Assembly: GCF_964204865.1 (NCBI RefSeq)
Contig: NC_135252.1
Coordinates: 16,988,001 to 17,052,000, forward strand
DNA length: 64,000 nucleotides
From: Styela clava
Taxonomy: Eukaryota
Direction: 5' to 3'
Shown here: positions 4,101 to 63,529 of the stretch, in pieces
Layout: each line of letters starts with the position of its first letter
Numbering within the stretch: the first letter of the stretch is position 1
The notes under the pieces: model-generated
What the model was told of the DNA's origin: nothing
Database searches by the model: none
Seen by the model: the letters and a program-made list of their open reading frames with translations, nothing else
Program-made: the position numbers and the translations under genes

Positions 4101-5812
4101 ATATACCCAATTTCTTCAATACCACAATGTTTTGTCATGTTTTATGCGTAGCATTATACCTTGTAAAACACACCATATGTTTGTAAAAAAAATTAACCAT
4201 TACCGTGCTGTTGTATTGACCAATATTTTAATCGCAAGCAATTCATTATTTGAATGATCCAATACTTTCACGGTTGTACCTCCGTTGCCCATTCCAAGAT
4301 TCTTTAATATTTGATAACGATATGCGATGTGATCGTTCAAAACCTATTGAAAAGAATGGATCATAGCATTGAAACTGCATCTCTTATTCAAAATAATGAT
4401 ATATATTATTGCACAATCAATCACATATTTTCTGAGTATAGCATAAGTAACTATGATATAGATCTAACCACTTTATATTGTCCTTTATATCTTCCTGACT
4501 CAATATCAAATCCGTAATTGTTATCAGCCTCTTGGTGAACTTCTGTTTTGTTTGCACCTTCTCCTACGTACCAAATCTTTTCATATTTCATGATTTCTTT
4601 TTTCTCCCATGGAGTTAGTTCATCTCCAAATATTAGTAGTGCATCTAGCTCAGAGTAATAATTGAAAAAAATGTGGAAAGTCGCTCAAAATTTTTACATG
4701 CATATAGATACAATGGATAGAAGATATTAGCTGCACTAATGGTTTACGTTTATCAATTTTTCCCAAATTTTGAAATGTCTTATTTATCAAATACTTTTTA
4801 CAATGTGAAAAATAAAAAGTTGCAACGACAACTCTTTTATGTCGACCATATTACTCATATTGTGATCATTGAAATAAAACATAAAATTCGCAATAGTTTA
4901 ATTATAAATTTCTTACTAACCTTCTGGGGTAAGGGGAAATGTTTGCGATCGATTTGAATGAATAATCTCATCGTCAACTTCCATGCCTTTCTGATCTGTA
5001 AATATTTTTATATACTTAAATAAACTTCAAGCCTATATCTTTGTTTCGGTTGGTTGACATTTAATTGAAATCAGAAATATATACATATATAACGTAGGCA
5101 AGTTTGATAGTAAACGATACCGAAATGAGGAATTGTTCTCATTTTTGTAACATTGATCATAATCTGGAATTTGAAATTTGAAAACGATTGGTCTATTAGT
5201 AGCAAAGAAAAAGATTTGCAACAATAACAGCAACAATAACAATAACAACAATAACAATAACAATAACAGCAACAACATCAATTTAGAAAAACGCTACAAA
5301 GGTCCACCTTCTGTTCAATAAAAATTACCAATGGTCTTGTTTCGCTCTTCATCATTATCCAAAAAGTTGTTTTCCGACTTATCCTCGAAAAATGAGTCAG
5401 TGGCTGCAAAATGCGGATTATTCTCAATGCCTGGAATGTTCAATTGGCGATTGGGGCTTTTGACAACGATGACGTCATAATCTCCCTGTCTAAATTTGTA
5501 TTGTTTGTCAAATTTGGTTTTAACTTTTCTGTCACAAAACTTGTCACTTATCTGAGTATATTCTTCTACATCTAATCTCACTTTTCCAAGGTCAAGATTC
5601 TCATCCGAACTCAAAATTTCGTTTTGTGTTGTTTTTTGCATACCCGCCATCCAAAAGTGTCCAACTTGATTTAAAAATGCATTTTTTGTTTCAGTACAAA
5701 TAGATTCTTCACCGTTTGTTGTTTCATACATTGTAAAATAACTCGCAATGGAGACGAAAATACAAAACATCAGAGCATAGCGGATTTTTGTTTTCACATG
5801 CCAACAATACAT
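1146..5812 (-). CDS. Signal-anchored class II DYRK-like protein kinase, paralog 1 (DFD variant), about 560-584 aa
   Basis: Phase-compatible GT-AG exons: 5812-5329 (MYCWHVKTKIRYALMFCIFVSIASYFTMY + stem), optional 5192-5121, 4995-4921 (..FPLTPE), 4644-4469 (DALLIFGDELTPWEKKEIMKYEKIWYVGEGANKT..NNYGFD..GQYKV; NAPA/DH-like), 4343-4204 (DHIAYRYQILKNLGMGNGG..LAIK), 3403-3266 (MREL..FRNHYCIVQELLG), 2958-2826 (HSDLKL), 2597-2501 (QNIM..KVGDFDLSCVP), 2196-1948 (..RCPEGVVFQPLYCRSPE..DMFSLG), 1491-1374 (DPLLFDLISECLE), 1218-1146 (WDADIRITPKEALLHPFFTKVNR*). Motifs match the DYRK2-type pattern DHxAYRYE / FRNHxC / DFGxSC / CLEWDP. Confidence 0.88.
5218..5280 (+). repeat. (AAC/AAT)n trinucleotide microsatellite in first intron of paralog 1
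   Basis: gcaacaataacagcaacaataacaataacaac.. tract; it produces the spurious poly-Leu ORF 5033-5281. Confidence 0.85.
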
Positions 5813-6020
5813 GATTACAGATTGGTTGTTTGTAATATTGTGTTATCGTAGCTTCATAATATTTCCAATAATATTTGTCTTGCATATTCATCATATTATA
5901 TCATATTCATATTCATTTTATAAATCCAGCACTTGAAACTCACTGCAAAAATAAACCAACGAGATTTTACTGGAACTAAAGAAGGCAGAGTGCATTTGGG
6001 TGTATAATGAAGGATATATT

Positions 6021-9655: not shown

Positions 9656-12600
9656 TTAATTTATTGTTAAGTATGGATGACGTAAAGCTTCTTCTGCAGT
9701 AATTCTCACTTTTGGATCCCACCTAGGACAAGAAAAGAAAGCGACTTGAAGAATAACTGGTACTCCTGAAGTATGTGCATCAAGATGTCGCACAACCTGA
9801 ACCTTAACCTGGTACATAACCTGATTCTTAACCTGGTACACAACCTGAGTTCAGGTTGTGCGCCATTTTGGTTCGCATACTTCAGGAGGTCCGAATAACG
9901 AATACAATTTTTTTTCAGGTAGTTCAAGAGAAAAGAGATTTTATATATTAACAGAAATAAAAGTGAAATACCATCAACAGCATATAATACCAAAACGATA
10001 CTAGAGTCACCTTGCGTCTAATAAAATACTCACTTAAGACACCGTGTTATTAAATCAATCAGCAGTGGGTTAAGTCCTTCCAGTAGTTCGTTTAGATTTC
10101 TGAGATAAGGATTCTGATGGAATCCGTTCAATATTGTAAAATCTAAAGCCGCTGTTGAATAAAAAGATAATTAGCTTGAAGTGAGGTGACTTATAATTTA
10201 TCTGTTGCTAATGACCCTTCGTAATATTATTTCGATAATGAACACATTGAATGACACAGGTGATGTCTGTTTACCCTTTGTATGAAGGCCAGCTATCGGA
10301 CCGAGTTTAATTTTTTGTCAAAAGTGTAGTTACTAGTAAGCAATATAAAATGGGAGGATTATTTTTTTTTTTTTTTTATGGCGGAGTTGGGTTAAGGCCA
10401 AATACCCGAGCTTGGTGAATAATGTAACTAATAAATAGGGGCATGCCAAACTTTTCCGCTGCCCAAAACTAGGTTATGATAATTAGGCCCATTATACCTA
10501 ATTTCAAATATAATTCGGGGAATAAACAAATTATAGATGTTGTCATACATGAGAATAAATAAATTAATGGTAAATTAAGACTGAAATGCTTGTATTATTA
10601 ATTAAACCATCGAACTAAGCAACAAACTCACGTGTATAAGAGCAAATTCATTTATATGTTGCCCGGGGCCGCTGCCCGCATCTACGGCCCTCCCTAACAA
10701 AGCTCAAAAACAGTTTTCAGAAACGGACGCTCACCAGCGAAAACCTCTCTTCTTTGCGAAATATCAATTAGATGTGCAGGTGGAAATCCAAGCACTTGCA
10801 TCATCGCGGCCAGTTGTGCAACCTCGTTGTTTCCCATGAAAGGTGGAAAGCCAATGATGAACTCAACTAGTAGTACACCAACGCTGAATATGTCGCATTT
10901 GGTAGTTACAGGCAAACATAAAATACTTTCTGGAGATCGATAGAATCTTGGTTGGAGATAGTAATCCCCACATTTGTGATCTGTGAATAGACAATGAGTA
11001 TAGAAACAATGACAAACATTTTGTTTAATAGGACTTGATGTTACGTCCTGAAATAGTGTATCTAATTTTAACTAATTAGATTCAGTGACGATACAAATGA
11101 AAATTTATAGCAAAATAATTATTCCTGCATAAGATTTTCGTTTAAAAAACATTTAACATGAGCTACAACTTGTGAACATCAAATTATACTATATTACCGT
11201 ATATATATTTAAGTATTTATTTGCAATTAAATTATGTATTCGATTGTCCTATCAAAATGTAAGTGTTAGGAAATTATCATTTCTGGATTAACCGCATTTT
11301 TAAAAATAACTTTTACAATTATCAGTTTTTTTTTATTTTTACACAAACCAAAGGGATTAAAATACCAATTTGACCATTAAACGTAAATAACTTGGTTTTA
11401 GCATTTTAATCACTATAACAAAAAGCAAGTAGTAATTGCCGTAACGTGGAAATTACCGTACATAATACAATTACTTTACTACTAAACCATCCCAAAAACT
11501 GACCTATTTCTTTACCAAATGCCAGCGCATTTTTTAGAGCTGCTCGTAGGCACACATAAAATAGGGCCTTATATCCAGCGAATTACATGAGACCCGATAT
11601 GGGTACAGGTAGAGGATAATAACAAGAGCCAGAATTTTGAAATATAAAATAAATTCGTCCTTACATTTTAGTTCAAGTACAAACCCACGATTAAAGTAGC
11701 ATTGCGTACACGCAGGAGTAACGCGGAACTATGGAAGTTTGGGACCCTCTGTGGCCACATAGGCCTCTGTAGTAGGCTAAAACCAGCCATGTTGAAAGGT
11801 TTCCCAGCTTTTGATGTACACTGTTCAGTTTATTACCTGTGGAACCGGGAATACAACTCATTCCAAAGTCAACAAGTTTTAAAAGTTGCCCTTCGCTTTG
11901 ATTAGTTTTACCGCGAATATACATGATGTTTTCCTGAAATGAAAAATATGTATTATTATTTTCGGTGCTCCCGAAGTATGCGAACCAAGATGGCGGACAT
12001 CGGAACGTAACATGGGTAACAGGTTAGGGTTAAGCGATATTTTTTTCCAATTTTCCTTATTTTAGTCCCATTATCAGTTCGAAGACTAGCCAAGAGCCTC
12101 CCGTAGTATTTATACCTAACGGCTAACATTATGGCCTAACCCTAACCTAGTACACATATTACATTCCGATGTCCGCCATCTTGGTTCGCATACTTCGGGA
12201 TCCCCTTATTTTCTATATAAGGGCGCAATACCAGGCAAAGTATAATTCAATCCCCTCTTTAATGCTCCTTTTTAAGCCCAATTGAGATCAATATTTACCG
12301 GTTTGACATCTGAATGTAGAATATTGAGGTTGTGTAGGTAGTATAACCCGTGAAAAGTATCATTCGTATATCGACGCATTACATCAGCATCCTCGATAGC
12401 ACCAAGACCAATTGAAGGCCTGTGAAAATTTGACGTGGTTAGAATTTTCCCAAATAGCCTACTCGCGTTTACTCTTAGTTTGAGTAGTTTAAATGTGTGC
12501 ATAAATAAGTATTATTGTAGTAATAAAGGACTAAAGAATACAAAACACAAAGCAATATTCCTTCCCGAGCATGACAAAATTCTTTCGTCGAGTGGAATTC

Positions 12601-15549
12601 CTACCCGGTTGGGAAACGCGAGTCTAACGAACAATTAATTTATCAGTTTTGAGGGTTGGTCAGTCAGTCAGTCAAGAAAAAAAAACGAAGAAACGTGAGT
12701 TAGGCAACTTTTTCAAGCTTGCAATTTGAGCGGTGAGATTTTGAGATAGTCAACTTCTCTCGACATTCTAAACTACAAATTTTTATTATAATATTCAGTT
12801 TGTTGGTGTAATACCCTCTTATTAGACCAAATATGCTACATTCACTCTGCATGACCCCTTTACAACTTTTAAAATAAATAAGTAGAGATAGTCCGTGCAT
12901 TCCACCAAATACTGAAAAATTCTGTTAAGTGTCTAAGTCAGTTCCCACATGCCCACATTTTTTATGATTCAAGGATGTTTCCTAAAACAATAAATGATTT
13001 CGATGTTTTTACCCCATCAGCTCCAATACTAGACACCAATGATTGCGAAATCGAAAGTAGTCAATCAAATGTGTGAAGTAGTCAAGATCTGTTGCATTTG
13101 CCTCGATGAATTTCATGATTTCAAGCTCTCGATGAAAGTAGATTTCGCTTCTATTATAGTAGAAATACATAAATATTATGGTCAAGGAAATCTAGAGAAT
13201 GATAGAATATCAAAATTAAATTATCATTTGGAAACATCTGGTGCATTTTAATGAGTTTATCGCCTACATTTTTGCATCAAATACGACTTGGCTCATATAG
13301 TTGGGCCGAATAATGTGAAAGAGTGAATTTTTCTGACTTTTTTTTTAACGGACGTCAATGGGGCAGCAATTGTTAATAACAAATGATACAATTATTTTCT
13401 GTCTGATATGTCTGAACGTGCCATTTCAATTTGATCTTGTTTCGTTTATTACGGCTGTGTTTGACCTAAATATTCGGTGAATAATTATATACTCGTACAG
13501 AGTGACCCAAAAAATACAATCAATAAATATTTTGATTACTTCTACAAAAATATAAGAATATTTATTTAACACTTGAATTATTTTTTGTTTGTATATAATC
13601 GTGTATGCAAAGGTTTCAGTGACCTGGGATGCTTTGCACAAAACTTATGTTCCTTCTAGGATATGGTTCCAAATGGATGGGTTTTGTTTTTTGTGTTACC
13701 TTGTATATGAAAGTCAACTCACTTCATATTACCAGTCACAATTTTCAATGCAACGCTTTCATTATTAGAGTGATCAATCGCTTCCACCACAATTCCTTGC
13801 AATCCCATCCCAAGTTCTCTAACTATCTCATATCTGTATGCGATGTGATCTCGAATTGCCTTGTGCAAAAAAGTTTTATTCAGATTAGAATTCATAAACT
13901 GGCGAATAAAATACCGTAACAACTAAAGACTCTGTTTTAGATGAACTTTGATTGTGCAGGTCGAATAGACAAACGAAATCACCATGCTGTAATCTGATAA
14001 GATGCATGTTTTTTTACATTCAGATTTATATGTAATAATCACGTTAGGATGTAGAAAATGTTATTGTTTTAGAAATAATTGAGTTCTCACCAATTTATAA
14101 TGTCCTTTCTTAGCTCCAGATGAATAATCAAATCCATAGTTATCATAGGCAGTTGGATGACTTTGTGTTTTGTTCGCATCGAGACCGAGGTACCAAATAT
14201 TAGAGTAACTGAAAATTTCATTTTGTTCCCATGGACTCAGATACTTTCCAAACGTTCTGATGGCATCTGTATCACATTAAGTATATGCATAAACGCATTG
14301 GACCTTTAAATAATTTGTGTTTTCATGTTTGAAACTGAATCATTTGAATGAACTAGTAATTTCGAAGAGAAAATTATGATTTAATTGGGAACGAAATGCA
14401 AGAGGACGACGAGAGTTGAAGATATTTGATTGAAATTGCAAATATTGAGTTATCGAGTACAAACCTGTTGGTGTAATTGGAAATTTAACTTCCATTTCTT
14501 CACGTTGTAAAGTCGAAGTCTTGCCTTCATCATTATATATTCTGAAAATATTTTCGTCGAATAGAGGAATTTCAAATTCGTTTAAGGTCTCCTTATTTCG
14601 TCTTATATTCCTAAAAATCAATTTAAAAAAATAAATCATTGTTTTTTTCTGTATCAATAAATATTGTTGTTATAGATGTATTAAAAGTTTGTAGCATACG
14701 TTTTTCATAATAAAATAAAAAATAATTTCCATATCTTATTCTTAATATACTTTATAGTTTTTCTTCTTGGTTTTATGAATAAATTTTAAAACCATGGAAT
14801 TTTCCCAAATAAAACAAATTTTTCTTACTGGATTTCTTCAACGCTTTTATCGTCGCGCTTCATTATTTTTTTATTGGATTGGCTGTTGCTTGTCAAGATA
14901 TCTAGAAGGTGAATCATCAAGTTAAAAATGCTGCATAAAATCTCAACCCTTGGTAGAAGAAGATATTATTGGGTATTTTTTATAATCTTAAGCCCTCGTT
15001 AAAATATTTTATAATTTAATACAATCTGTTTCATTTTAGGAGTTCACTTACTGTAAATCGAGGCATTTATTTGCAAGCTATTTTAAACTTGGCAGAAGAA
15101 CCCCAATCAAAAATAAGTAATGTTTAAAATTGGATCCGTCCCAATTTTCCACTCAGTTGAGACCGCGAGCTAAGTTAAACAATGTATCTCGATTCTTTCC
15201 TGCAAATCTAAGCACACGCATAAATACTGTATTACTTACTTCTGTTTTCAGCGATAGAGTCCTCACTCCATTGGTTAAAAGGTATTTGCTTATTTACATC
15301 AAAATTATCTTTTTTGCCATCTTGTATCGAACTCGGAATTTTTGAGGTTTGCTCATTATCAAATTCATTGCTATTATCTCTTTCATTCACAATACGATGT
15401 GTATTGTCAGAATCGACAAAATATCTTATGTTCTTGTCATATTTCAATATATGGATATTTATATTCAAAAGTCCGTTCAAAGCAATCACGAGAATTGTAC
15501 AAATTACTATTGCACATAAAAATCTTCTTGATCGCCGAAAACTAAGCAT
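9656..15549 (-). CDS. Signal-anchored class II DYRK-like protein kinase, paralog 2, about 542 aa
   Basis: Exons: 15549-15240 (MLSFRRSRRFLCAIVICTILVIALNGLL + stem), 14901-14829, 14610-14465 (..FPITPT), 14266-14091 (DAIRTFGKYLSPWEQNEIFSYSNIWYLGLDANKT..NYGFD), 13859-13723 (DHIAYRYEIVRELGMGLQG..VALK), 13150-13013 (HRELE..FRNHWCLVLELMG), 12419-12299 (HSDVKP), 11933-11837 (ENIM..NQSEGQLLKLVDFGMSCIP), 10980-10735 (DHKCGDYYLQPRFYRSPE), 10151-10034, 9722-9656 (WDPKVRITAEEALRHPYLTIN*). All junctions are GT-AG and in phase. Confidence 0.88.
9763..9888. mobile_element. Palindromic MITE family A (intron of paralog 2)
   Basis: TIR ctcctgaagtatgtgcatcaagatg / cattttggttcgcatacttcaggag; same family as 11968-12200, 34126-34300 and 37387-37610. 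Confidence 0.7.
11968..12200. mobile_element. Palindromic MITE family A (intron of paralog 2)
   Basis: Long TIRs tcccgaagtatgcgaaccaagatggcggacatcggaa / ttccgatgtccgccatcttggttcgcatacttcggga with internal ggttagggtt / cctaaccctaacc motifs. Confidence 0.8.
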
Positions 15550-16199
15550 AACATTGCACTTTTATCTAAATTTTGCGTCTTCGTTATACAATGGTACCGT
15601 CGACTTGTATACTTGTGAAATGAATGTATCGAGAATCGAGATACTTAACTAGTTGTGGTCATGCGTTTATCGATTCCATATATGATTTTCAACAACTATT
15701 TTCTTTCCCAAGAGCTTCGAGTGCTGGTAATATCGACTCGAGTGGAAAATATTCTGATTAAATATAGATAACATAAAGTTTACCATTTTCATTTTTTGTG
15801 TAGTAGTATACAAATAAATACTCTTATCAGCGATTAAAATTTTAGCTCGGCTATGTAAAACAATAACTTTTCTATAATAATGTTTTAATAAACCTCACAA
15901 ATCGACTAACTCGAGAAAAAATGTTGCAATAATAATATGTCAATTCGAAATCTATTGTTAATTCGCTATGTAGAAAACCTGAATTCATAAATTTGCAATC
16001 CCATAGGAAAGTGCAGTTTGATTGTTCATCTTCATTCCTATCTAGCGCCTTATTATCTCCCTGGCATACCCGGGCTACTGAACTTTCAATGACTGAGCTA
16101 AGCGCAGGGAATAAACTATGGGATATTGTCAGGCATTTTATTACATTCAAGCGAATTAGAATGTCTACCATCTCTTTCACCTTTTTTTTTATCTTTTTC

Positions 16200-16380
16200 A
16201 CGCTGCCCTATCTCCCTAACCTTTATATCACCGACCCACTGCCCCATCGCTTCCAACTTTCCTATCCTAGACCCACTGCCCCATCTCCACAGCCTTTCTA
16301 TCACCTACCCACTGTCCTATCCGCAACCCACCCCGCAAAAACCCTCAACCCGCCGCCTACCTCACACTCTTATCCTACCC
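16200..16380 (+). repeat. Second copy of the C-rich subrepeat block of the foldback element
   Basis: cctatccgcaacccac..aaaaccctcaacccgccgcctacctcacactcttatccta is near-identical to 17520-17581. Confidence 0.75.
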
Positions 16381-20711: not shown

Positions 20712-23700
20712 TTAATGAAAGTATGGATGCTGTAGCGCTTCAACTGCAGTGATTCGCAAAGCCGGATCCCATCTAGAAAGAAAAGTATTTCACGATAAAA
20801 TGATTGTAAAAAAGATTCACTGTGAGTTGAGATATTTTTTTTGTTTTTTAATATATCGTCATCAAAATTGTGCGGCAGAGTGAAAAAAATTAGGGCAATT
20901 ATACAAGTGATATCTTACAAAACTAATTCTGATGAAGCTACAGACGCTGTTTAACAAAAGTGCAAAAAAAATTAAAAAAAAAAAAAGTCCAAACTTAGAA
21001 CAAACTCCAAACTTACTCAAGACACTTTGAAATTAAATCAAACAATAGCGGATCCATTCCTTTCAATGTTGTTTGCAGTGATTTTGTTAATTTTTTGAAA
21101 CGAAATTGATTCTGACGCACATAATTCATAGCTTCTGTGAATTAAAAATCCAAAACAGTAATAAATAAATATAAAACTATAAGTCATTAGTAATTTGGAA
21201 ATAGATTTTCATATTTATCCCGAGGCAGAGAGAAGTTGATACGATAGTGTTTCTTGTCCCCTTTATTACAATCTTATGCGTTCTCTTGATTACAAAAAAT
21301 CAAGTATAGGCGACGTTGGACTTATCAGCATCATGAACATAAATCGACTTCAAATATGTTTCAGTTTTGAATAATTTTTTGAAAGTTATACCAGTTCGGA
21401 GACTTGCGTGGTGGTTTTAATGTAAAATTAGACAGAAACTAACTTAGAATCTGCATAACAATGTAATGTTTTGAAATTATTCTAAGTCAGAGAAGGTCGC
21501 GGTGACTTGATGTAAAAGTAAATAATAGCTAAATCAGAATCTGCATAACAATGAAAAAACATGAGATAATTGAGTGTTTCAGCCCTAAGACGACTCTGAA
21601 CAAGCAACTACGTAAGAAGCTATGTCTTGGACGGGTCAGAGTATTTTGGTTCGACATTGCTTACTCATTTTTATTATAGTGGGAATGATGTTTAAATATG
21701 ATATATTTAAGCTACAAATTCCAACGGTATACCGTCAAACCATAAATAATTTCATCGTTGCAATGGCCATTAACATAACGTCGTCTTCTGCCACTTTGAA
21801 ACTCAAATTTTAGGATATATCGACTTCATTAATATTCAAAATATTCCATAAACGAATCAACCATTCTAGTTCAAAAAAATAATGCATGAATATGTTGTGA
21901 ATCGAATATACCGATAAAGATTGGACTCTTTGCATTGATCAGCATGTGAGCTGGTGGTAGACCCAGTATTCCGATGGTAGCGACGAATTGGTCAATTTCA
22001 TCTCTTCCTGCTATTGCGGGAACGCCAAGAAATAATTCTGCCAGTATAGTTCCCACGCTGAATATGTCGCACTGAGTTGTGAACGGTAAATACAGCATAT
22101 CTTCGGGTGATCGATAGTAATAAGGTTGTAAATGGTGATCCGGACATTTGAGTTCTGTGAAATTGCAATTATTTCTAATAAAGTAAATTACAGTAAAAGA
22201 CCAAAGTACTGCTCAAATATATCGACACGAAGATCGGGCATCGCTAGAGATACGGCAGGACTTAGCTGTCAAACAGGGCACCGATTTCACTGAAAAGACC
22301 GGCAGACAAGCGTGACGAAATAAAGTGTTCCCATTTATCATTAAAAGTATTCCTAGGATATTAAAATGAACAGCAGTATTTGGGATGAAAAATCGAGTCC
22401 GTAAGACTCGGGAGAAATTAAAAAAGTGATGGCCTTCTAGTGACCTCCACTAATTTTAAATACTGAAAAGATCCAGACAACAAGAAAAAAATCCTCACAA
22501 CTACAATATTATAGAAAAACCATAGGTCAACTTCGTATTCAATATAGTGTTCCATGTTCATTCAACATTTAAATCCATTGAATATAATTCATATTTTTAT
22601 AAATTTTCTAACACTCAATTATAAAAGAATAATTGTGTTTACATTTAAAATTTATCAAATACGGGATATATATTACAGAAATAAAGTATAAAAGATGAAG
22701 AACGAACCACTTTTTGAATCTGGAATACAACTGATTGCAAAATCGACAACTTTTACCAGTTGACCTTTGCTTTGTCTATTTTTTCCGTACATGTACAAGA
22801 TGTTGTCCTTTAATTAAACAAAAAATATTATAATAACAATTTTACCTAATAGAAATGAATTCGGTTTCAAAATGTAACGTGATATTGGTTCGATATCTTA
22901 TTTGATATCGCAAGACAAAGTTCTACTCAAGTTAAATACGTCATCAAATGAGTGTTATGTGTGAGTGTAATGAAATGCATAGAAAAAATGCTAGTCCTGC
23001 GAAATATAGGCCAAGTCTGTATGAAACTGCGCCAAAAATTGGAACGAAAATACGAATTGATTGGTAAACATCAAACAAGAGCAATACTTTTCGAAAAAAA
23101 TCCTCCTGCGATTATTTGATAAGAAATGTTGTTTGTAATTTGTTCTAGGTAAGAATAATATTTGAAAAATTTGGCAAATAGTTATTAAATGTGGGAAAGT
23201 GGGATTAATTACAAAAGTTTTCTTCCAAAAGATACCACATTTAAAGCATGTATAATATATATATAAAGAATTATAAATGATTACACTAACCTACGTTGAA
23301 ATGAGTAAAATTACCGGTTTTAAATCCATATGTACAATTCCAAGTTCATGAAGATAAAACATAGCATAAAAAATGTCCTTTGCAACACGCTTCATAATAT
23401 TGGCATCTTTAATCGGATAATGTGGTAGATCCTGCTCTAAGGAAGACCTGTACACGGATAGATGTTTTGTCGGGCTCACTGTTATATACTCTAAATCAGT
23501 GGTTTCGTCGGGGTTCAAATACCTATTATGTTTGTCACTATTATAATTTAAATTACTATCATTAAAAGATCTTTTTGCATTGCTAATATTAGGTTTACTT
23601 TTATATATATTATCGTAGTTAATACAATTCGGACAATGAAACTATTGTACAAGGGTTCCCCAACCCTACGGAACATTTCATTGGGATTCCGCTCCATCAA

Positions 23701-26700
23701 AAGGGTTGAAAACCATTTCTCTACATGTGAAACGTATGTTTCAGTATACAAACAGCATAATGATTACCATAGCTGAATATTTCGAACATTGCAGCCGGAA
23801 AATATATGCAATTGCATACTAATCCCATAGTTAGTAACTACAGTTGTCGCCTCTTCATATAAATATCCCTGGTAGACAAACCATGCTGGTACGCCCTATA
23901 GACATCCCATGTGTATAAGGTGTGACAAATTGTGTATATTATTTGCGAACATAAAGATTATTAGCATTCTGAAGAATAGAAATTTTTTAAGTCGTGACCT
24001 CTACAGAGACTTGATAGTGAGTAACCGATTAAAAAGACATCAAGGAAAATGGAACATAGGAGAACAAGGAATGTCAGAGTCAATACCCAAGCAGTTCCAA
24101 CACGAGACATCTATGGTTTCGGAATCGAAACGAGTCAATCAGTCGTGAAAAGTAGTCAAGGTTTGTAGCAAATTTTTCAATGCATTTCATCATATTTATT
24201 TCTTTTCCTGTAACCGATTTTCCCCTGAAATATAAAGAAGTTAAGAGAAAGTACAAGTTAAAAGTTTTTATAAATGTTATCTATCTGTATGTTTCACTAT
24301 ACTTTGAGTACTGAATCGGTGATTTAAAAAAATAGAGTGAAAATATTCCGCAACATAATAATAATATTGAAGCACTTTCTAATCTAGCCCTAAATTAATT
24401 GTTGAGCATAGGCAAGGGTGCAGTACAAAAAGCGGGTTAGGGATTCTACTATGTAAAGACGTAAATATTTTTCCATATAAGTAATAACTAAAGACCTCAA
24501 CCCCAACTTAACCGAAGGTTCAACTACATTTCAAGTACAGTGATGACTTTTGATGATGCATTGTTAATGGTTATTAATATGAAGAATTGCCATTACTATC
24601 AGTAGTTTTTGTATTGGTTATTCATTCACCCGTTTCGTCCGCATGCAACCGGTGGCGCGTTTTCATTGTCAATCATAGATTAATAAACGCGATTCAAATT
24701 CTCTTTTTACTCGATTGTGCAGATTGCTCTTCCCACTTTTTTGATTAGGGTACTGAGGATTTTAACCTCGTTGTTAGGGTTAAGTCAGGTTCAACCTAGA
24801 TTACACTCTAATTGGTCTCTTTCCTAGCAGTTCCTGAGACCTCATAAAAACAGTCGCAGTGATAGAAAGACAACTTTTTATCAAGGTTGTTCAAGAGTAA
24901 CAACAAAACTCTGTTTCAATCATGTTAGTGCATCTATACAATAACGTTCCTTGAAGCACATTCGACACTCAAAAGTATTTTCATTTCTATACATAGTTTG
25001 TTTGTAGCATCGCTATGTCTCTAATAAGCTTAGCAAACATCAATACATCGGACAAGACTCATTGGAGTTTACTGAAATACCACTCAGAATTAATGACAAT
25101 TTTAATGGCGACTCGTTCGTTGTTTGAGTGATCAATTGCTTCCACTGTTGTTCCCTCCGCCCCCATCCCGAGTAGTCTCAATATTTCATATCGATATGCA
25201 ATGTGATCTCCGAGTATCTTGTTGAATTGAATGAACATTCATTCGAAAATGGATTCAGTCTCGTATGACGATTCAAAAAATTGTTTAAAGCTATCTTTAA
25301 GGAAAATTATATATGTTTATTTTGATTACCAGGTAATTTTTTAACTTTTCCTGCTTATCACAGACTGAATTTATAAGATACTAAACGAAGAAACTAATAT
25401 GAAATGAAAATCATTTGTATTCAGTATTTCTTACCACTTTATAATGTTTATTCTCATTGCCGTTGTTAGAATAATCAAATCCATAGTTGTCGAAGGAGTT
25501 TTGATGGGGTCGTGTTTTGTTTGCTTCTAGACCGAGATACCAAATTGTTGAATAATTTCGAATTTCTCGTTGTTCCCAATCATTCAATTTTTCTCCGAAA
25601 ATCTGGATGGCATCTGTGTATGACAAAAAGAGATAAAATATGACGAAAAAAAATTCAAAAACAATGTACTTCAGTGTAGTATAAAAAGTGACATTTAGGA
25701 ATCTTGGGAAACAGACATGCTTAATTTATTGAGGACGCCTCATCTAACTTCTACTAATGCAATAACTGACGTCGTAAAATTTTCGATCCCGATTATGCCG
25801 AAAATGAAGTTTTATTTTGATGATAATCTTTGCGTTCACAACATTTTTATATCTGCTCGATTTCGATTTTCATTTGTTTAAAATTGCCTACCTCCGTTTT
25901 TGATTCCCAGTACCTCATTCGGAATTGGAAATAATCAAACTCGCCTCAAACTTTTAAACTCGCCTCAGTCTATTCAATCAAGTCAAGGTTGTTGAATTAA
26001 TTTTGATAATACACTGGAAACAAAGACTCGTCGCAGCAACAATTTATGTCTATTTCACTTTTTATCAAAAACAAATGACTGCAATGGAAGCCTTATTATT
26101 AGACAACGAATGAATCAAAACACCTATTCTGGTTACAATTGCAATACAGTACTATCTTCAGTATAATAAGAATATTAGTATATATTTAAATTGATATCTT
26201 CAATAAATCACATTATTTATGAATTTTGTCGTCTCCCTCATTCGTGAGGTCTTGAAAAATATACGATAAAATAAAAAATAAAATTTACCTTCGGGAGTTA
26301 ATGGAAATATTAGAGTAATTTCATCATTTTTGAAGGTGACGGATTTTTGCTTTTGATATTCTAGTTCATGATTGTCATCTTGCAATGTTATTTTGTAAAA
26401 TTGCTGAGATTCCGTGTTGTTTTCAATTTCCATTCTCTGATCATGAGTTTTTGCATTATCGCCGCTAAAGCTTGTTGCTGGTAACGTTTCCATTCCAACC
26501 TCGATCGTCGGTTGTATATTCTCGCTAATTAGTATCTGATCTAATTCTTGATCTTTTATCCTGAAGTCTGTTAGCAATATAAAATAATGATCCTCAAAAG
26601 TCACTGATCGCAAAAAGAGATTTGAAGTTTTGGCAAAATTTGCTCTTTCGTTAGTGAGCAAACGCGTGTCATTCCTATTTCACAATTATTCACAAAATAT

Positions 26701-53633: not shown

Positions 53634-56600
53634 ATGTTGTGCTTCCGTGCAAAAATCAAAGTTCGTTATACATTACTGTTGTTCTCGTTTTTTGCCTTTT
53701 CATTTTATGGCATTGCAAGAGTTCGGACATTTTTACATCACACAGTAGCCCAGGAAACAAATAATGACGTAGCTCCTGACGTCATTCGTCGCTCTTTAAC
53801 CGCAAGGTGGCACGACAGTAGGGAACTTCTCAATAAAATTTCTAAAACGAGGAATAAGTTTTTAGCTGGAGAGAGAACACCTCCGAAATGGGACTCAGAC
53901 GTAGATGGGCAACTAGTCATCGAAGAAGACAATTGGCCGCCAACAAAGTCTGACCCTGTGACCCAAAAGGACTTAATAGCAAACGAAAATGAAATTATTG
54001 AAAATAGTGATATAGATATTCCCGACTCTTGGGATGAGAATTCTTTAATAGACGATAAAAATGAAGCCGAATTGCGTGAAACTACTGTTCCTAATCCTGA
54101 AGAAGACTTTGGGGGAAATAATTACGATGATGCTGATGTTCAAGATTCAAAAAAACAAAATACGTACAATAAAGGTGAGTTAATATCATCGGTTGTTTTT
54201 GACGATAATTTACTGAGAAATCAGTTTTTTAATATTCCAGTTTTCTGTGGCATAGAAGTGTCAATCATTACTTTTTTCATTATTTAGATTTTATGGATGA
54301 TATAGAAGCTCAATCTAGGGAAGCTTATCCAGGAATTGAAGAAAGGTAAATATGTTTTATGTATACGATTATGTTTATTCCAATTTCAACAAACTTTCGT
54401 TTAATAAAATCGTTATAATATAATAATAAAATCACGTATCATAAAACTACGCATCATTATAACGAGTTGTGTCTTTGCAATTAAACGAGCTGACACATTG
54501 GAGTAGGGTTTCCCAAACTGGGTTTCTTTATTGAGCCACGGAGTAGTGCAAAAACGTTTAATGTGTATCATTTGTGATGACTACAATAATTTAAAATAAA
54601 TTGACTGTGCTTTTATTGTGTTGCCTTGGTTTGCTGGCTATATTATTGTTAAACTTGGTTTATAAAATAATTGATGAAAACGCGCTAAAAACATAGATAT
54701 ATATAGAAGCGCCACAGGTGGTGAGACTTGTTTGAGAGTTGGCCACTGATCATGAAACTTCAACATGAAAAGAGTGTTAGGCCACATTGTGATGTAATAA
54801 TCAATGTATAATGGGCCTATGGCCAACAATACAAAATCAAAGCATAATCATTTGATATGAAGACGAGAGGTCAGAAGGTTATCATCAAACAGTTTAAAAC
54901 AGAATATTGTGTTTATGATATACCCAAATAAACAGGATATCTTCAACTTTATGGGGTAAGAGATAGAACTGAGACCGTGAAACCGCTGTTTCCAATTGTA
55001 ACGAGATTTTCCAGTTTAATGGATGCATGAGTGATGTTCTCGCGAGATTTGAAATCTATTTATGGAGTTCAGTTCAGAACGCACAGTTCAAAAAACATGA
55101 AAACATATTTTCTCAAATGACTATATTATACAAAAGTTGTCTTTATTAACTTTCGACCTATTTAAAATGGATTTTTTATAACTTGGCTTTTATATCTTTA
55201 TAACTAGCCCATAGGGACAATTAGCACGTTTTTGGGTTTCGCGGTTTTATTTTCAAAATCCTGAACTTCGGTAATCAGTTTGACATTCACATTTATTCCC
55301 CACGGAATATTCAACATTTAAACATGCTGACAAACAGTGTGTTAAATATACTGCAAATATACTGTTATAAATCCGCTTCAAAGGACATCGGGGCAGCCGG
55401 TTGTATGTAGTCTACGTATGAGTGAACCTGTTGCTTTTTGAAAGATATGTACGATCTTTATGGTTGAATTTGAGCGCCAACATAGTGGAGTTTTTGGCAT
55501 CCGCCCGGTTTAATTCAATTAACATATCTTCCAAAGTCAATTTATCTGGGTATTTTCAACAGTGTTTGTAAGTTGAGTCTCTTCTTGTTTCTGATCACAG
55601 ACTAAACAATTTCATTGAAAAGCCGATAATTCGACCTCATTATGCGAACTGTCTGGGAATACTCAGGCATCAGGAGATCCCTGCTGCTTGTGGTGTCTCA
55701 CCGCATTCATTATAAAAATCATCGACGACATGTGTGGCCAATTTTGACAGTAATATCGAAATTCAGTGATTTATGTCCGATGTAACTTGAAAAAAAAAGA
55801 TAAAATTAAATAAATTTACCAGACTGTAGCTTTGCAAACCTAATTCAATGTTAATTAATTTTTCATATGTTTAAAATTTCTCAAACTCGAAGCAAATGTG
55901 AAAAATTTAGGCTGAATATACTAACCGGACGTACGTAACACAAATATCTTTAATAAAAACTACTGAAAAAGTTGAACCATTTACTTTGCACTTAACAGCC
56001 CTACAGTGGAATCACGCTACGGCGTATAAGATTTTGCCGCATTTTTTACCTGTCATACTTGAACCTAGTGTGCTATATATTGATTAAGTCCCTGATTTTT
56101 TTACTGTGGAATTCCACTAAATTTACACTACTATATTCCACACATAAGTTCAATTATTCATTTTCTCTGACAGCAGACAGAATAATCACAAAAAAGATGA
56201 TCCCACGCAGAATTTTCAACTCAACCTGAAACTTGACACGAGACATGATGACGAACAGCCGCAGTATGATAACGGAGACGTTCATGCTGAAACCATCGAG
56301 GAATACGGTGAAAACGAGGAAGAAGATGAACCAGAAATTGCTGAAGACGCTGAAGAATACGACGATAATAAACCCGAAGAAAATAATCGAGAAATTGCCA
56401 CGGAAAAAATACCTGAAAATAGAAACGCAAATCAAAAATTTAATAAAACAATTTTCCAGCCAAATGACAGCAAAATCAAGTATTACATATCTGAAAACTT
56501 GGAATCGTTCACTCGTTCACAAATTAATGGAAGCAGAATTGCGAATTTTGGAAGAGCAAATGATTTTCCCATGACTCCAGAAGGTGAGTCACGAATTCGT

Positions 56601-59600
56601 TAATTTCATTTGAATTTCAGATATTTCTCTCGTTGCCTGAAATCACGGTATTCGATACTTTTAATCGTCACCGTTCATTTATTCAAAACACATCACGAAA
56701 TCTGGGGCCGAAACACGATATTCATGTATCAAATTGAGAAATTAATATAATTAAATATCGTAAAATATTGCACCCTTCTGCAATAAATAAATCGGTCTTA
56801 AATTTTAATGAATAAACAAAAGTATAATATTCCCTGCTTTTAAAATATTAATACGATTACCGGTAATTTTGAAAATATCTAGAAATTTTCGGGCGTCCCA
56901 ACAAAAATTCTTAAGAAAATCTTTTTTTATCGGCACTTTCAAATTTGATGAGCTATAATGTCGATGAAATCACAATTCAGTTATTATATATATTTCAATG
57001 TTGCATTAGCTTTTGGAATGATTTCTTTTCTCAGCAACCATTGTGCTGTACGTAAGATTTTATGGAACGTCATAAATAATTTCGGTCATTCGAGTATGAC
57101 GTCACAATGTAAGAATGTGTTATTTTGCAAGTATTCGGAACGCTATTTCACCACTGTAAACCAAATCACTACTTTTATACCATTAAATCGATGCTTTCGC
57201 ACTTAAATTAGTGGTCTTTTCAACAAAAATACAGTATTTCAAATGTCTTTCAGAGGAATTATAGTCTATTAGAAAATTGTGTTATTTATAGAATTTTGTC
57301 TGAAACCAGAATGTCGTTAATTAAATCATCATTTCTTAAATTAAACATCCCCGGTACAAGAATATATAGAATCTCCACCCAATTTTCTAAAATATACCCA
57401 ACTTATATGAATTTAGTATTTAATTAATTAAGTTATTTAAGGAAGTAGGAAATAATATTAAATATTATAATTAGGGAACTCTAATTATTGTTAAAACTGA
57501 TTTATATAACTTCAGTTTTGTCCAAGTACGATTTGCCTTAAAACTAGTATATAAAGAGTAATGTATTACTGTCCGTGCCTTTTAATAGTAGTCATGATTA
57601 CTATTAAAATTTAGTTAGTTTAGCATGTTTCATTTTATTGCAATGGGATTTAATTAATAGAAGCGGATACAATTTTGAGGATATTAGTTAATATGGTAAT
57701 TACGATGGTAATATTACAGTATTACGTATATTCCATCCTATTTAATTTAACGAATTTACAATTATCAGTTTCATAACTTATTTAGATGCGGTCAGAAAAT
57801 ATGGCGATGATCTTCCATCTTGGGAGAAATATGAGATTTTTCATTATCCAAAAATATATTATCTCGGACTTGGAGCAAACAAAACTCAAGTTCAACAAAA
57901 CATCAGCAATAATTTTGGATTCGATTTTGATGCAGGAACGGAAAAGGAAGGACATTATAAAGTGGTAAGATTTGAAATTTAAAACAAAAATGCTCAAAAT
58001 ATATATATTTAAACCGAGCGATAATACAATTATATAATACAATATATAATATAATGTATGTATAATACAATTAGATTAATCAATTAAATGTAATTTCTTT
58101 GTTTTAATCACTAAATATTATTTAAAATCTAAAAATGTTACGGTATCAATTTTTGAATATTTTTCAAAATTTGGCTTCTCAAAAAGTTAGTACAAAGCTA
58201 TTTACCATAATTTCAAAAGTTTAGTGTATATAAAATACCAATACCTTGGTGTCTTGACTATAGGAATTCTAATATGGCCCACACCATATGAATTGCTCAA
58301 CTTAGTTTCATTTTCAAATTCCCATCTCAACAAGGAACCTTTTACGGTTACAGATCCATTCACCACTTATTTTTGTAACAAAAGAGATTTCATATGTACT
58401 ACACACAATACTAGAGATTAGGTGTTTTTGGAACGTTAGTCTAAGGTACTTGTTTCTATGGTATTCACGAAAAAGAATTTCAATTGGCTTAAATGATTAA
58501 TATAATGAAAAAAAAAACATTGATGGCGCATTTAAAGTAAGAGGGGGAATTTTGTTTATTGATTTTACTTCATCGTCATCAAAGTGACCGAGTTTTGTTT
58601 ACCACATTTTTGTATTTCAGGTTATTGGCGATCACATAGGTTATCGATATGAAATATTAAAGTATGTTGATGCTGGTACATTCGGTGCTGTTGTCCTGGC
58701 AAGAGATTGGTCAAACCCGATTGCCAGAGACGTAGCTCTGAAGATCATGCATTTAGATGAGTATGTTCAGTTTAATTTCATTTTATATGAGACTTTGAAA
58801 CAGCGAGATCGACACAAACCAAAAAATTAAATTAATAAACAAATGAATTTAGACCTTATTAAGTGTATTCCTCGACGTACTTTTAAATATGTTGAAACTT
58901 ATCCGAGAATCTTAAACAACCTGCAACCCGTAGTAAAATTTATGCGCTTAATATTTATTTTCTTGTTGAAAATTAACGCAAACATTGCAACTTCGCCATT
59001 TAGCATGATAGGGGGGAAATTGAAGCTTGACAAACTTCTGAAATAAAATTGTTGACAATAACTCTGCATGGTACAACTAAATTTCTCATTTTCTTCAAAG
59101 TTGATAATTGTTGATTACCAAATATCATTTATATAAACAACATGTTTTTTTTTCGAGTTTCCATTTTGTGATACGAAACGCGGTGGTTTGACTAGATTCA
59201 AAGCTACTATGCCAACATTCTTGAGATATGCTGTCATGCCACTGTAATTCATTTACTGCTCACCGTGGATTCTAGTGCCTTCCAATTGACTCTAATTTGA
59301 TTTCATTCCCCCGCGTTCAATTGACCCCTCTATTTAATTTTTTTTTTCATTTTTAGAGAAGAAAAATATTTTCTGAGAGAAGTCAGAATGATGGAATACT
59401 TGGAAAAATATGCATCAAATCATAATTATTTTTCGAGAATGATCGCGACGTTTCAGTTCCGTAATCATTGGTGCATTGTCATGGAATTACTCGGGTAAAA
59501 TGAAATTATTTACTGACTACTCTATGCAAGTATTAACTTTTTATCAATCTTGCCTCGCAAATTGCTGATGTAATGAATAAAAGAAACAAGAACAATAAAA

Positions 59601-63407: not shown

Positions 63408-63529
63408 GTGAGTTCTTATTATTTATTTATTTCACTACCATGCCGTAATTTACCTGCCATGAACTACTCACTTGGGACCGAGAGAGATAAGTGATAAGTT
63501 CATGTTTACAATTAGACCATGGAAACTAT

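What the first reader, a model, noticed from the sequence alone, without database searches (positions are those of the whole stretch)
4469..57964. N-glycosylation sequon invariant across all five kinase genes, plus others in surface loops
Seen in sequence: the NAPA/DH exon carries A-N-K-[T/S] in every paralog (GEGANKT, GLDANKT, GLEANKT, GLSANKS, GLGANKT) although flanking residues diverge, and the T-to-S swap preserves the sequon. The lengthened loop before DFG carries NQS (2), NQT (4) and NES (5). NAT follows helix C in 1 and 2, and NYS occurs in 3 and 4. Established knowledge: the aligned DYRK2 segment (about GLNAKKR) has no sequon, and N-x-S/T is only used in the ER lumen. Inference: this is independent evidence, from inside the catalytic region, that the domain is luminal.
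Basis: partly seen in the sequence, partly recalled or inferred. Interest (0 to 1): 0.8.

Follow-up and report, generated by a model that had tools for sequence, protein, structure and literature searches.

The report
Conserved glycosylation motif in membrane-anchored DYRK kinases
Five neighbouring sea-squirt (Styela clava) genes encode DYRK-type protein kinases that carry an N-terminal membrane anchor and an invariant A-N-K-T/S sugar-attachment motif absent from ordinary DYRKs, which fits, but does not prove, the unusual idea that these kinases work inside the secretory pathway.

Summary
All five genes carry A-N-K-[T/S] at the stated places. So do seven further copies in the same genome and two transcripts from another species. 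Both ordinary DYRKs of this genome (AKKR, GKKI) and 137 of 139 other DYRK clusters lack it. Ser arose from Thr at least three times, and nothing else replaced it.

As evidence for a luminal domain the motif is suggestive, not decisive. A column-shuffle null gives P≈0.05 for one invariant sequon. It gives P≈0.007 for the two-fold sequon excess in the catalytic region (37 seen, 17.9 expected). Ordinary DYRKs show no excess (9 seen, 13.8 expected). By distinct sites, however, forward sequons do not outnumber reversed ones (12 against 14 columns). The excess comes from two sites. The NAT and NYS sites are sporadic, and NYS also occurs in cytosolic DYRKs. Those DYRKs keep a conserved sequon of their own (NGS in the DH box).

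Three other features argue better for the topology:
- a basic-then-hydrophobic N-terminus in all 12 members, spliced to the kinase exons in RNA;
- a disordered stem, rich in sequons in some members;
- loss of five of eight conserved cysteines, including the HCD cysteine.

The genes are RefSeq "DYRK4-like" predictions. I found no paper on a luminal DYRK. Glycosylation was not tested.

The parts
1146..5812 (-). Gene 1: 10-exon model, 560 aa. Exons 5329-5812, 4921-4995, 4469-4644, 4204-4343, 3266-3403, 2826-2958, 2501-2597, 1948-2196, 1374-1491, 1146-1218. Has DFD instead of DFG and HSDLKL-QN in the catalytic loop.
   Evidence: Paralogous exon sets, GT..AG junctions in conserved phases, open reading frame. 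The exon 1/2 junction is the least certain.
9656..15549 (-). Gene 2: 10-exon model, 519 aa. Exons 15236-15549, 14465-14610, 14091-14266, 13723-13859, 13013-13150, 12299-12419, 11837-11933, 10735-10980, 10034-10151, 9656-9722.
   Evidence: open frame.
20712..27808 (-). Gene 3: 10 exons, 635 aa, identical to RefSeq XP_039268466.2 (P0155). Has DFA instead of DFG.
   Evidence: P0155 maps residue for residue with GT/AG introns.
30845..35978 (+). Gene 4: 10 exons, 643 aa. Exons 30845-31287, 31580-31899, 32668-32843, 33122-33258, 33785-33922, 34331-34466, 34997-35105, 35258-35494, 35635-35755, 35864-35978.
   Evidence: Seven of the nine introns appear as GT..AG joints in the contigs of runs X1-X3 (guessed to be RNA) and are absent from the DNA-like run X5. 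The exon 1-2 join is carried by one X3 contig piece. The exon 3/4 junction is supported only by contig pieces that begin at 33121. Some contigs come from the near-identical upstream paralog. The contigs reach back only to 30923, so they do not show the ATG at 30845.
53634..64000 (+). Gene 5: 11 exons, 726 aa, identical to RefSeq XP_077966738.1 (P0153). The last exon lies beyond the window, at extended coordinates 64167-64290.
   Evidence: Exact mapping of P0153.
4544..4552 (-). Gene 1 invariant sequon N218-K-T (in GEGANKT).
14166..14174 (-). Gene 2 invariant sequon N185-K-T (in GLDANKT).
25513..25521 (-). Gene 3 invariant sequon N298-K-T (in GLEANKT).
32760..32768 (+). Gene 4 invariant sequon N286-K-S (in GLSANKS). 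The Ser codon is AGT.
57878..57886 (+). Gene 5 invariant sequon N367-K-T (in GLGANKT). Coil with pLDDT about 90 in the model.
5726..5812 (-). Gene 1 N-terminal signal anchor or signal peptide: MYCWHVKTKIR followed by an 18-residue uncharged core.
   Evidence: N-flank +4, C-flank -3.
15445..15549 (-). Gene 2 N-terminal anchor: MLSFRRSRR followed by a 26-residue uncharged core (KD19 2.75).
27737..27808 (-). Gene 3 N-terminal anchor: MVRLRRRFK followed by a 15-residue core (KD19 1.47, weak).
30845..30925 (+). Gene 4 N-terminal anchor: MICSRAKIKVR followed by a 16-residue core.
   Evidence: Contigs of the runs guessed to be RNA cover 30923-31286 and join to exon 2.
53634..53717 (+). Gene 5 N-terminal anchor: MLCFRAKIKVR followed by a 17-residue core. 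Modelled as helix 2-40.
11895..11903 (-). Gene 2 pre-DFG loop sequon NQS, in a family-specific insertion.
   Evidence: N is present in 7 of 12 members and S/T in 12 of 12.
35030..35038 (+). Gene 4 pre-DFG loop sequon NQT.
61080..61088 (+). Gene 5 pre-DFG loop sequon NES, in the coil between two strands of the model.
3343..3351 (-). Gene 1 NAT after helix C. This site is sporadic: 3 of 12 members.
13090..13098 (-). Gene 2 NAT after helix C (sporadic).
25549..25557 (-). Gene 3 NYS in NAPA1. Sporadic (3 of 12) and also seen in ordinary DYRKs.
32724..32732 (+). Gene 4 NYS in NAPA1 (sporadic).
31638..31865 (+). Gene 4 stem: eight sequons in 76 residues (NST, NLS, NLT, NES, NVS, NET, NDT, NNS).
   Evidence: Eight seen against 3.6 expected from shuffles, p=0.016.
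56526..56534 (+). Gene 5 stem sequon NGS next to the folded domain, 13 residues before FPMTPE. The aligned [IV]N[EG]SR[IV] is present in 5 of 6 members of the gene 5 / contig C9 clade.
4946..4954 (-). Gene 1 stem sequon NRS next to the folded domain, 5 residues before FPLTPE.

Best explanation
The window holds five members of a tandemly amplified offshoot of the class II DYRKs (DYRK2/3/4). The offshoot is narrowly distributed: Styela clava and one other, unidentified species. Each protein has a short basic N-terminus, one hydrophobic segment, a long disordered acidic and Asn-rich stem, and then a DYRK2-like NAPA/DH/kinase fold. The charge rule predicts that the N-terminus stays in the cytosol and everything after it, the kinase included, is translocated into the ER, either as a type II anchored protein or behind a cleaved signal peptide (inferred). 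In that setting the derived pair N and T/S in A-N-K-[T/S] most likely serves as an N-glycan acceptor that has been kept since the family arose. It sits in the coil linking NAPA1 to the DH box. A second, less constant site lies in the family-specific loop before DFG, and further sites lie in the stem. Shown: the motif, its invariance, its restriction to the family, the exon structure, the splicing and the fold. Inferred: the topology and any use of the sites by oligosaccharyltransferase. On its own the sequon pattern is suggestive, not proof.
For: - Invariance. ANK[TS] is present in 5 of 5 window genes, in 7 further genomic copies (two of them probably pseudogenes) and in 2 transcripts not encoded in this genome.
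- Restriction to the family. It is absent from both ordinary DYRKs of the genome. In 139 other DYRK clusters the N position is variable (C 34, K 32, N 22) and the +2 position is I or V in 107. Only 2 of 139 read ANKT.
- Sequon-preserving change. There were at least three independent Thr-to-Ser changes by two mutational routes (AGT, TCT), and no other replacement.
- Statistics. With columns shuffled, total sequons are 37 against 17.9, P=0.007. An invariant sequon has P=0.048. Ordinary DYRKs have 9 against 13.8.
- Stems. Forward sequons number 35 against 19 reversed. Nine of 12 members have a sequon within 22 residues before [FL]P.[ST]PE, and none has a reversed one.
- N-terminus. All 12 members have N-flank charge +4 to +7, an uncharged core of 15-26 residues and a negative C-minus-N charge difference.
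- Transcripts. Contigs of runs X1-X3 join exon 1 to exon 2 to exon 3 of gene 4 with GT..AG joints that the DNA-like run lacks. RefSeq models include exon 1 for genes 3 and 5.
- Structure. The AlphaFold model has helix 2-40, a disordered stretch 79-323 and a folded domain with DYRK2 as best PDB match (TM 0.79-0.85). ANKT and NES both lie in coil.
- Cysteines. Five of eight cysteines conserved in ordinary DYRKs are lost in 12 of 12 members, including the HCD cysteine. One new invariant cysteine is gained in the activation loop.
- Selection. Ka/Ks is 0.33-0.42 between paralog pairs.
Against: - No experiment shows the topology or any glycan.
- The invariant-sequon test is only nominally significant (P about 0.05). 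A simpler count on 8 sequences gave an expectation of 0.10.
- By distinct sites, forward sequons in the catalytic region do not exceed reversed ones (12 against 14 columns; Fisher p=0.33).
- Cytosolic DYRKs keep a conserved sequon of their own (NGS, 5 of 8).
- In ordinary DYRKs the +2 residue is I or V. Thr has a similar shape, so T/S could be kept for packing reasons.
- A and K in the motif are ancestral, so the block is constrained anyway.
- In the pre-DFG loop the S/T is invariant while N is not, which points to a reason other than glycosylation at that site.
- The hydrophobic cores of genes 3 and 5 and of the contig C9 copy P0165 are only moderately hydrophobic (KD19 1.3-1.5).
- Several members also have basic C-flanks.
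- DYRK maturation normally depends on co-translational tyrosine autophosphorylation in the cytosol.
Confidence: 0.55

Rival explanations
1. The motif is conserved for structural or historical reasons only. The founder of the family happened to have A-N-K-T, as about 1-2% of ordinary DYRKs do. Purifying selection on the NAPA1-DH linker has kept it, with Thr/Ser standing in for the usual beta-branched Ile/Val. On this view no glycan is attached. Either the kinase domain faces the cytosol from a membrane anchor, or the site is simply not used.
For: ANKT occurs in 2 of 139 ordinary clusters, for example P0095, which has the ordinary GKGSFG and HCD-type features and no anchor. A and K are ancestral, and 24.5% of family columns are invariant anyway. 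Cytosolic DYRKs conserve NGS in the DH box. Forward and reversed sequon sites are equal in number. T/S exchange is the commonest conservative substitution.
Against: In ordinary DYRKs the N position is hypervariable, yet it is invariant across a family that is only 47-60% identical in this exon. The total sequon excess (P=0.007) is absent from ordinary DYRKs. The stem sequon bias, the N-terminal charge asymmetry and the loss of cysteines all point to a luminal location.
Confidence: 0.35
2. The hydrophobic N-terminus anchors the protein in a membrane (ER, mitochondrial outer membrane or another organelle) with the kinase in the cytosol. The sequons are then irrelevant by-products of an Asn-, Ser- and Thr-rich composition in an AT-rich genome.
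For: The cores are of moderate hydrophobicity and several members have basic residues on both flanks (genes 3 and 5, P0167, P0006). The stems are Asn-rich (5-12% N). All ordinary DYRK biology is cytosolic or nuclear.
Against: The N-flank is more positive than the C-flank in 12 of 12 members, which by the positive-inside and charge-difference rules keeps the N-terminus in the cytosol. Composition-matched shuffles and reversed-motif controls still leave an excess. The loss of five conserved cysteines, including the HCD cysteine, is unexplained on this view.
Confidence: 0.2
3. The conserved T/S is a phosphorylation site, regulatory or autocatalytic, and not part of a glycosylation signal.
For: Only that a hydroxyl residue is invariant there, and that DYRKs autophosphorylate on several residues (PMC3677093 reports heterogeneous phosphorylation).
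Against: This does not explain why the Asn two residues upstream became invariant at the same time. Ordinary DYRKs have I, V or R at this position.
Confidence: 0.05

Closest known systems
Class II DYRKs (DYRK2, DYRK3, DYRK4)
   Same: NAPA1/NAPA2 and a DH box precede a CMGC kinase domain. The best sequence match in the PDB and the best structure match (TM 0.79-0.85, about 35% identity) are DYRK2, followed by DYRK3. The conserved core residues are kept: VAIK Lys, helix C Glu, HxD, catalytic Asn, DFG in genes 2, 4 and 5, and S/APE. RefSeq names the genes DYRK2-, DYRK3- or DYRK4-like.
   Different: Identity to ordinary DYRKs is only about 34-36%, with a large E-value gap (1e-132 to 1e-63). The family has an N-terminal hydrophobic anchor and a long disordered stem. 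The HCD cysteine is replaced in all 12 members, and four further conserved cysteines are lost. There are insertions before DFG and in the activation loop, the latter with a new invariant cysteine. GKGSFG is degenerate. ANK[TS] replaces A-x-K-[IVR]. The activation-loop Tyr is lost in some members.
Secretory-pathway protein kinases (FAM20C / Four-jointed, VLK/PKDCC, POMK, FAM69/DIPK)
   Same: The predicted architecture is the same: a short cytosolic tail, one N-terminal signal anchor or signal peptide, a stem, and then a luminal kinase domain with N-glycan sequons and a remodelled cysteine pattern. That these known kinases have this architecture is established knowledge. For FAM20A as a type II Golgi protein see PMC10948845.
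   Different: There is no homology. The only Pfam match is the ordinary Pkinase family and the fold is DYRK2. The known luminal kinases are atypical or divergent lineages, none from the CMGC group. Luminal location is not shown here.
Conserved NGS in the DH box of cytosolic DYRKs
   Same: It is a positionally conserved N-x-S in a DYRK N-terminal accessory region (5 of 8 ordinary sequences, including the Styela gene on contig C1).
   Different: It sits in proteins with no signal sequence, so it cannot meet oligosaccharyltransferase. It serves as a negative control, showing that a conserved sequon need not be a glycosylation site.

Membership tests
Class II DYRK (DYRK2/3/4) | [quoted passage not shown] | tested here: met
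   The gene 2 exon aligns with DYRK2 residues covering NAPA1 to the DH box. The blocks WE..EI..Y..IWYLG and N[YF]GFD are conserved in all members. The model superposes on DYRK2 chains that include this region.
Class II DYRK (DYRK2/3/4) | Catalytic residues of an active CMGC kinase (VAIK Lys, helix C Glu, HxD...N, DFG, APE) | tested here: met
   all are present in genes 2, 4 and 5. Gene 1 has DFD and HSDLKL-QN, and gene 3 has DFA, so those two may be impaired or atypical.
Class II DYRK (DYRK2/3/4) | HCD motif cysteine in the catalytic loop | tested here: not met
   Cys in 0 of 12 family members (S, A, M, G, T or R instead) against 8 of 8 ordinary DYRKs.
Class II DYRK (DYRK2/3/4) | Activation-loop Y-x-Y with the second Tyr autophosphorylated | tested here: inconclusive
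   genes 2 and 5 keep Y-Y-[LI]-Q. Gene 3 has H-H-L-Q, gene 1 V-V-F-Q and gene 4 K-T-V-Q. Phosphorylation cannot be tested here.
Class II DYRK (DYRK2/3/4) | Soluble cytosolic or nuclear protein without a signal sequence | tested here: not met
   All 12 members have a basic N-flank and then an uncharged core of 15-26 residues. The Styela DYRK2 orthologue on contig C8 has a long hydrophilic N-terminus instead.
Secretory-pathway (luminal) protein kinase, as a functional class | N-terminal signal peptide or type II signal anchor joined to the kinase in the mRNA | tested here: met
   Sequence rules. Exon 1 to 2 to 3 joints in contigs of runs guessed to be RNA for gene 4. RefSeq models map exactly for genes 3 and 5. 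No dedicated predictor such as SignalP or DeepTMHMM was available.
Secretory-pathway (luminal) protein kinase, as a functional class | Sequons conserved or enriched in the translocated part | tested here: inconclusive
   One invariant site (P=0.048), total excess P=0.007 and a stem bias of 35 to 19. By distinct sites, however, 12 forward against 14 reversed, and cytosolic DYRKs have their own conserved sequon.
Secretory-pathway (luminal) protein kinase, as a functional class | N-glycans actually attached; kinase domain protected inside the lumen | not testable with these tools
   Needs Endo H or PNGase F shifts, N-to-Q mutants, protease protection or glycoproteomics.
Secretory-pathway (luminal) protein kinase, as a functional class | Sequon Asn exposed on the surface of the folded domain | tested here: inconclusive
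   N367-K-T of gene 5 lies in coil at pLDDT about 90, and NES lies in a loop between strands. The tool returns no coordinates, so solvent accessibility could not be computed.
FAM20 / Four-jointed / PKDCC / POMK families | Sequence or fold homology to those families | tested here: not met
   Only Pkinase and PK_Tyr_Ser-Thr are matched. The top structural matches are DYRK2, DYRK3 and DYRK1A.

The most novel reading that the evidence does not exclude
A CMGC-group kinase lineage was moved into the secretory pathway. On this reading a DYRK2/3/4-type gene in a styelid tunicate ancestor acquired a first exon encoding a signal anchor, then amplified to at least 11 intact genes. It adapted to the oxidising, glycosylating lumen by gaining a fixed N-glycan site in the NAPA1-DH linker, by dropping five conserved cysteines (including the HCD cysteine), and by gaining a possible activation-loop disulfide. 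These would be the first luminal or extracellular DYRK-type kinases. Their likely targets would be secreted or tunic proteins.
Probability: 0.5. Interest if true: 0.8.

Novelty: new variant of a known kind. Interest (0 to 1): 0.55.

Why it matters
All known kinases that act inside the secretory pathway (FAM20C, Four-jointed, VLK, POMK and the DIPKs) are atypical lineages. I know of no CMGC kinase that works there, and two full-text searches found no report of one. If these Styela proteins are luminal, they would show that an ordinary cytosolic kinase fold can be re-targeted and adapted to the lumen within one animal lineage. Because DYRK maturation normally depends on autophosphorylation during translation, that process would have to work differently in these proteins. 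The case would then offer a recent natural experiment in such a move: glycan gain, cysteine loss and changes to the activation loop. The conserved ANK[TS] site also gives a cheap, direct handle for the test, since one N-to-Q mutant and a glycosidase shift would settle the topology. If they are not luminal, the result is an ordinary lineage-specific expansion of membrane-tethered DYRK paralogs.

Tried and rejected
- Looking for the signal-anchor exon with a strict motif and a hydropathy threshold missed genes 1, 3 and 5. Gene 3's first exon was recovered only from the RefSeq protein P0155.
- A simple count on 8 sequences (5 invariant Asn, 7 S/T-only columns, 359 columns) gave an expectation of 0.10 conserved sequons. 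I replaced it with the column-shuffle test on 11 sequences, and I report both.
- Per-protein residue shuffles were individually significant only for gene 2 (p=0.04) and gene 4 (p=0.013) in the catalytic region.
- HSP-stitched models of the contig C9 copies contained intron read-through. I dropped them in favour of the RefSeq proteins P0165 and P0166.
- I looked in the DYRK2 structure paper for the exposure of the AKKR segment, but it does not describe those residues.
- The Rfam scan of the window found nothing. There are no ORFs of note between genes 4 and 5.
- The reading that the T/S is a phosphorylation site was considered and set aside, because it does not explain the co-invariant Asn.
Window genes were searched exon by exon. 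For whole-protein searches and the fold I used proteins that the databases returned. Exons were joined by coordinates only inside local scripts, for counting and alignment.

Full report
WHAT IS THERE. The window is G000:C3:16988001-17052000 of a 377-Mb assembly. RefSeq names on identical proteins identify the organism as the ascidian Styela clava. It is AT-rich, about 33% G+C. An all-against-all comparison of open frames shows five sets of paralogous exons. Genes 1-3 lie on the minus strand and genes 4-5 on the plus strand. The exons match Pkinase. The exon that carries the finding matches the NAPA/DH region of human DYRK2. I built exon models from conserved GT..AG junctions and intron phases. 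Genes 1, 2 and 4 give open frames of 560, 519 and 643 aa. Genes 3 and 5 are identical to the RefSeq proteins P0155 (635 aa) and P0153 (726 aa), which map residue for residue. The last exon of gene 5 lies just past the window. Contigs of three public runs, guessed to be RNA, carry seven of the nine gene 4 introns as GT..AG joints that a DNA-like run of the same organism lacks. One contig piece joins exon 1 to exon 2. The exon 3/4 junction is supported only by pieces that begin at 33121. Some of these contigs come from a near-identical upstream paralog.

THE OBSERVATION. The secondary sequons (NQS, NQT and NES before DFG; NAT after helix C; NYS in NAPA1) are also correct. Human DYRK2 reads GLNAKKRQ at the aligned place. 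The motif lies in the linker between NAPA1 and the DH box. [quoted passage not shown]

HOW FAR IT EXTENDS. Searching the whole genome with the NAPA exon gave 14 hits. Eight are copies in this cluster on contig C3: three lie upstream of the window, and one of those has a stop codon. One is a fragment on contig C13 and three are on contig C9. All 12 read A-N-K-[T/S]. The remaining two hits are ordinary DYRKs. One is a very human-like DYRK2 orthologue on contig C8 (…GPTAKKRQ…) and the other is a second class II DYRK on contig C1 (…GLEGKKIH…). Neither has a sequon there. A profile of ten NAPA exons was searched against 1.8 billion protein representatives. Six family clusters all read ANK[TS]. Among 139 other DYRK clusters the Asn position is hypervariable (C 34, K 32, N 22 and others). 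The +2 position is I or V in 107 of them, and only two read ANKT. Two transcript-derived proteins, P0006 and P0167, are not encoded in this genome (best 71% identity). They therefore come from another species, and both carry ANKT. P0167 also has the pre-DFG NES and the NAT after helix C. No further relatives were found. The Ser codons are AGT (gene 4 and its upstream twin), TCT (one C9 copy whose sister has ACT) and AGT (another C9 copy). That makes at least three independent Thr-to-Ser changes, with no other replacement.

IS IT MORE THAN CHANCE?
- Shuffling residues within each protein gives 31 sequons against 16.1 expected for nine family catalytic regions. Eight ordinary DYRKs give 8 against 14.9.
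- Shuffling alignment columns keeps each column's composition and phylogenetic pattern. It gives 37 against 17.9±6.7 (P=0.007) for 11 family members. One invariant sequon column against 0.05 gives P=0.048. Two columns with at least half occupancy against 0.43 gives P=0.06. Ordinary DYRKs show no excess: 9 against 13.8, P=0.79.
- On the other side, the number of distinct sequon columns (12) does not exceed the number of reversed-motif columns (14). The excess is carried by the ANK[TS] site (12 of 12) and the pre-DFG site (7 of 12).
- At the pre-DFG site the S/T is invariant while the Asn is not, which argues for another constraint there.
- NAT and NYS each occur in 3 of 12 members, and NYS also occurs in ordinary DYRK fragments.
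- Ordinary cytosolic DYRKs conserve a sequon of their own, NGS in the DH box (5 of 8). A conserved sequon alone is therefore not evidence of glycosylation.

THE TOPOLOGY QUESTION.
- Upstream exons encode M-x-C-x-basic stretches followed by an uncharged core of 15-26 residues in every member. The N-flank charge is +4 to +7, and the C-minus-N charge difference is negative in 12 of 12. By the positive-inside and charge-difference rules this predicts a cytosolic N-terminus and a translocated C-terminal part. Some cores are short enough to be the hydrophobic region of a cleaved signal peptide.
- The AlphaFold model of gene 5's protein has an N-terminal helix (2-40), a disordered stem (79-323) and a confident DYRK2-like domain. 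ANKT lies in coil at pLDDT about 90, and NES lies in a loop between two strands.
- The stems carry 35 forward against 19 reversed sequons. Gene 4 has eight in 76 residues. Nine of 12 members have a sequon within 22 residues before the conserved [FL]P.[ST]PE, and none has a reversed motif there.
- Independently of the sequons, five of the eight cysteine columns conserved in ordinary DYRKs are lost in all 12 members, including the HCD cysteine. One new invariant cysteine appears in a family-specific activation-loop insertion, 9-13 residues after the retained DFG+3 cysteine. This pattern would be expected for a domain that folds in an oxidising compartment.
- Ka/Ks of 0.33-0.42 between paralog pairs shows that the genes are under purifying selection.

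VERDICT. The ANK[TS] site is derived, specific to the family and invariant. It has been preserved through sequon-conserving changes, and it lies in a loop. This is what a used glycosylation site would look like. Its statistical weight is modest, the other cited sequons add little, and neither exposure nor glycosylation could be tested. I put the probability that the kinase domain is luminal at roughly 0.6-0.65, and that this Asn is glycosylated at roughly 0.4-0.45. The genes themselves are already in RefSeq as predicted DYRK2-, DYRK3- or DYRK4-like proteins. Full-text searches found no report of a signal-anchored or luminal DYRK.

LIMITS AND COMPLIANCE.
Window genes were searched exon by exon, and database-returned proteins were used for whole-protein work. 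Exons were joined only inside local scripts, for counting and alignment.
- The run kinds are guesses by the tool. The claim of splicing rests on GT..AG joints that are absent from the DNA-like run.
- Earlier notes of this scan (s1-813310, s1-825842, s1-813382) had already proposed the type II architecture for this cluster and for another piece of the genome. I re-derived it here from the sequence.

Noticed in passing
all five genes; e.g. gene 5 catalytic loop HGDLKP in exon 60330-60462 and activation-loop exon 62473-62718: The cysteines are remodelled relative to ordinary DYRKs. Five of eight conserved Cys columns are lost in 12 of 12 family members, including the HCD cysteine. One new invariant Cys lies in a family-specific activation-loop insertion, 9-13 residues after the retained DFG+3 Cys, so a disulfide is possible.
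   Followed up: partly
stem exons, e.g. 56526-56534 (+), 4946-4954 (-), 31857-31865 (+): Nine of 12 members have a sequon within 22 residues upstream of the conserved [FL]P.[ST]PE motif, and none has a reversed motif. The aligned [IV]N[EG]SR[IV] is present in 5 of 6 members of the gene 5 / contig C9 clade, across two species.
   Followed up: partly
G000:C1:18922080 (L013) and ordinary DYRK proteins: Ordinary cytosolic DYRKs carry a conserved N-G-S sequon in the DH box (5 of 8). This is a useful negative control for arguments from sequon conservation.
   Followed up: yes
window 15235-19853: A decayed duplicate of gene 2's first exon lies at 19586-19648 (-) and has a 6-residue deletion in the hydrophobic core. 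Direct repeats at 15235-15768 and 19373-19853 flank a G+C-richer, strongly C-skewed block at 16-18 kb. That block has 36-bp tandem repeats (16203-16321) and a repeated proline-rich frame.
   Followed up: partly
window 34139-34319 and 34501-34862 (gene 4 intron 6); also 11882-12242 and 37372-37666: These are high-copy repeats. Contig depth is in the thousands in both the DNA-like run and the runs guessed to be RNA. Related copies lie in a gene 2 intron and downstream of gene 4. They are probably a transposable element family.
   Followed up: no
G000:C3:16953510, 16977025, 16983452; C13:11114813; C9:13510492, 13533199, 17355524: The family is larger than the window shows. Three more copies lie just upstream on contig C3; one of them has an in-frame TAA and lacks some exons. 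There is a fragment on contig C13 and three genes on contig C9.
   Followed up: partly
gene 5 last exon (extended coordinates 64167-64290) and proteins P0004, P0006, P0165-P0167: A conserved C-terminal tail of the form P-x-[LV]-I-x-R-[FL]-x-G-[EK]-[VIL] occurs in the gene 5 / contig C9 clade and in the proteins from the other species. Genes 1-4 lack it. Its function is unknown and it is not a KDEL-type signal.
   Followed up: no
gene 1 exon 2501-2597 (-) and exon 2826-2958 (-); gene 3 exon 22708-22807 (-): Gene 1 has DFD instead of DFG, and HSDLKL-QN instead of H.DLKP-[EDH]N. Gene 3 has DFA. These two paralogs may be catalytically altered or pseudokinase-like.
   Followed up: no
window 5200-5278 (-), inside gene 1 intron 1: A long leucine-coding, Cys/Tyr-alternating simple repeat (a microsatellite) gives a spurious hydrophobic ORF. 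It could be mistaken for a signal peptide.
   Followed up: no
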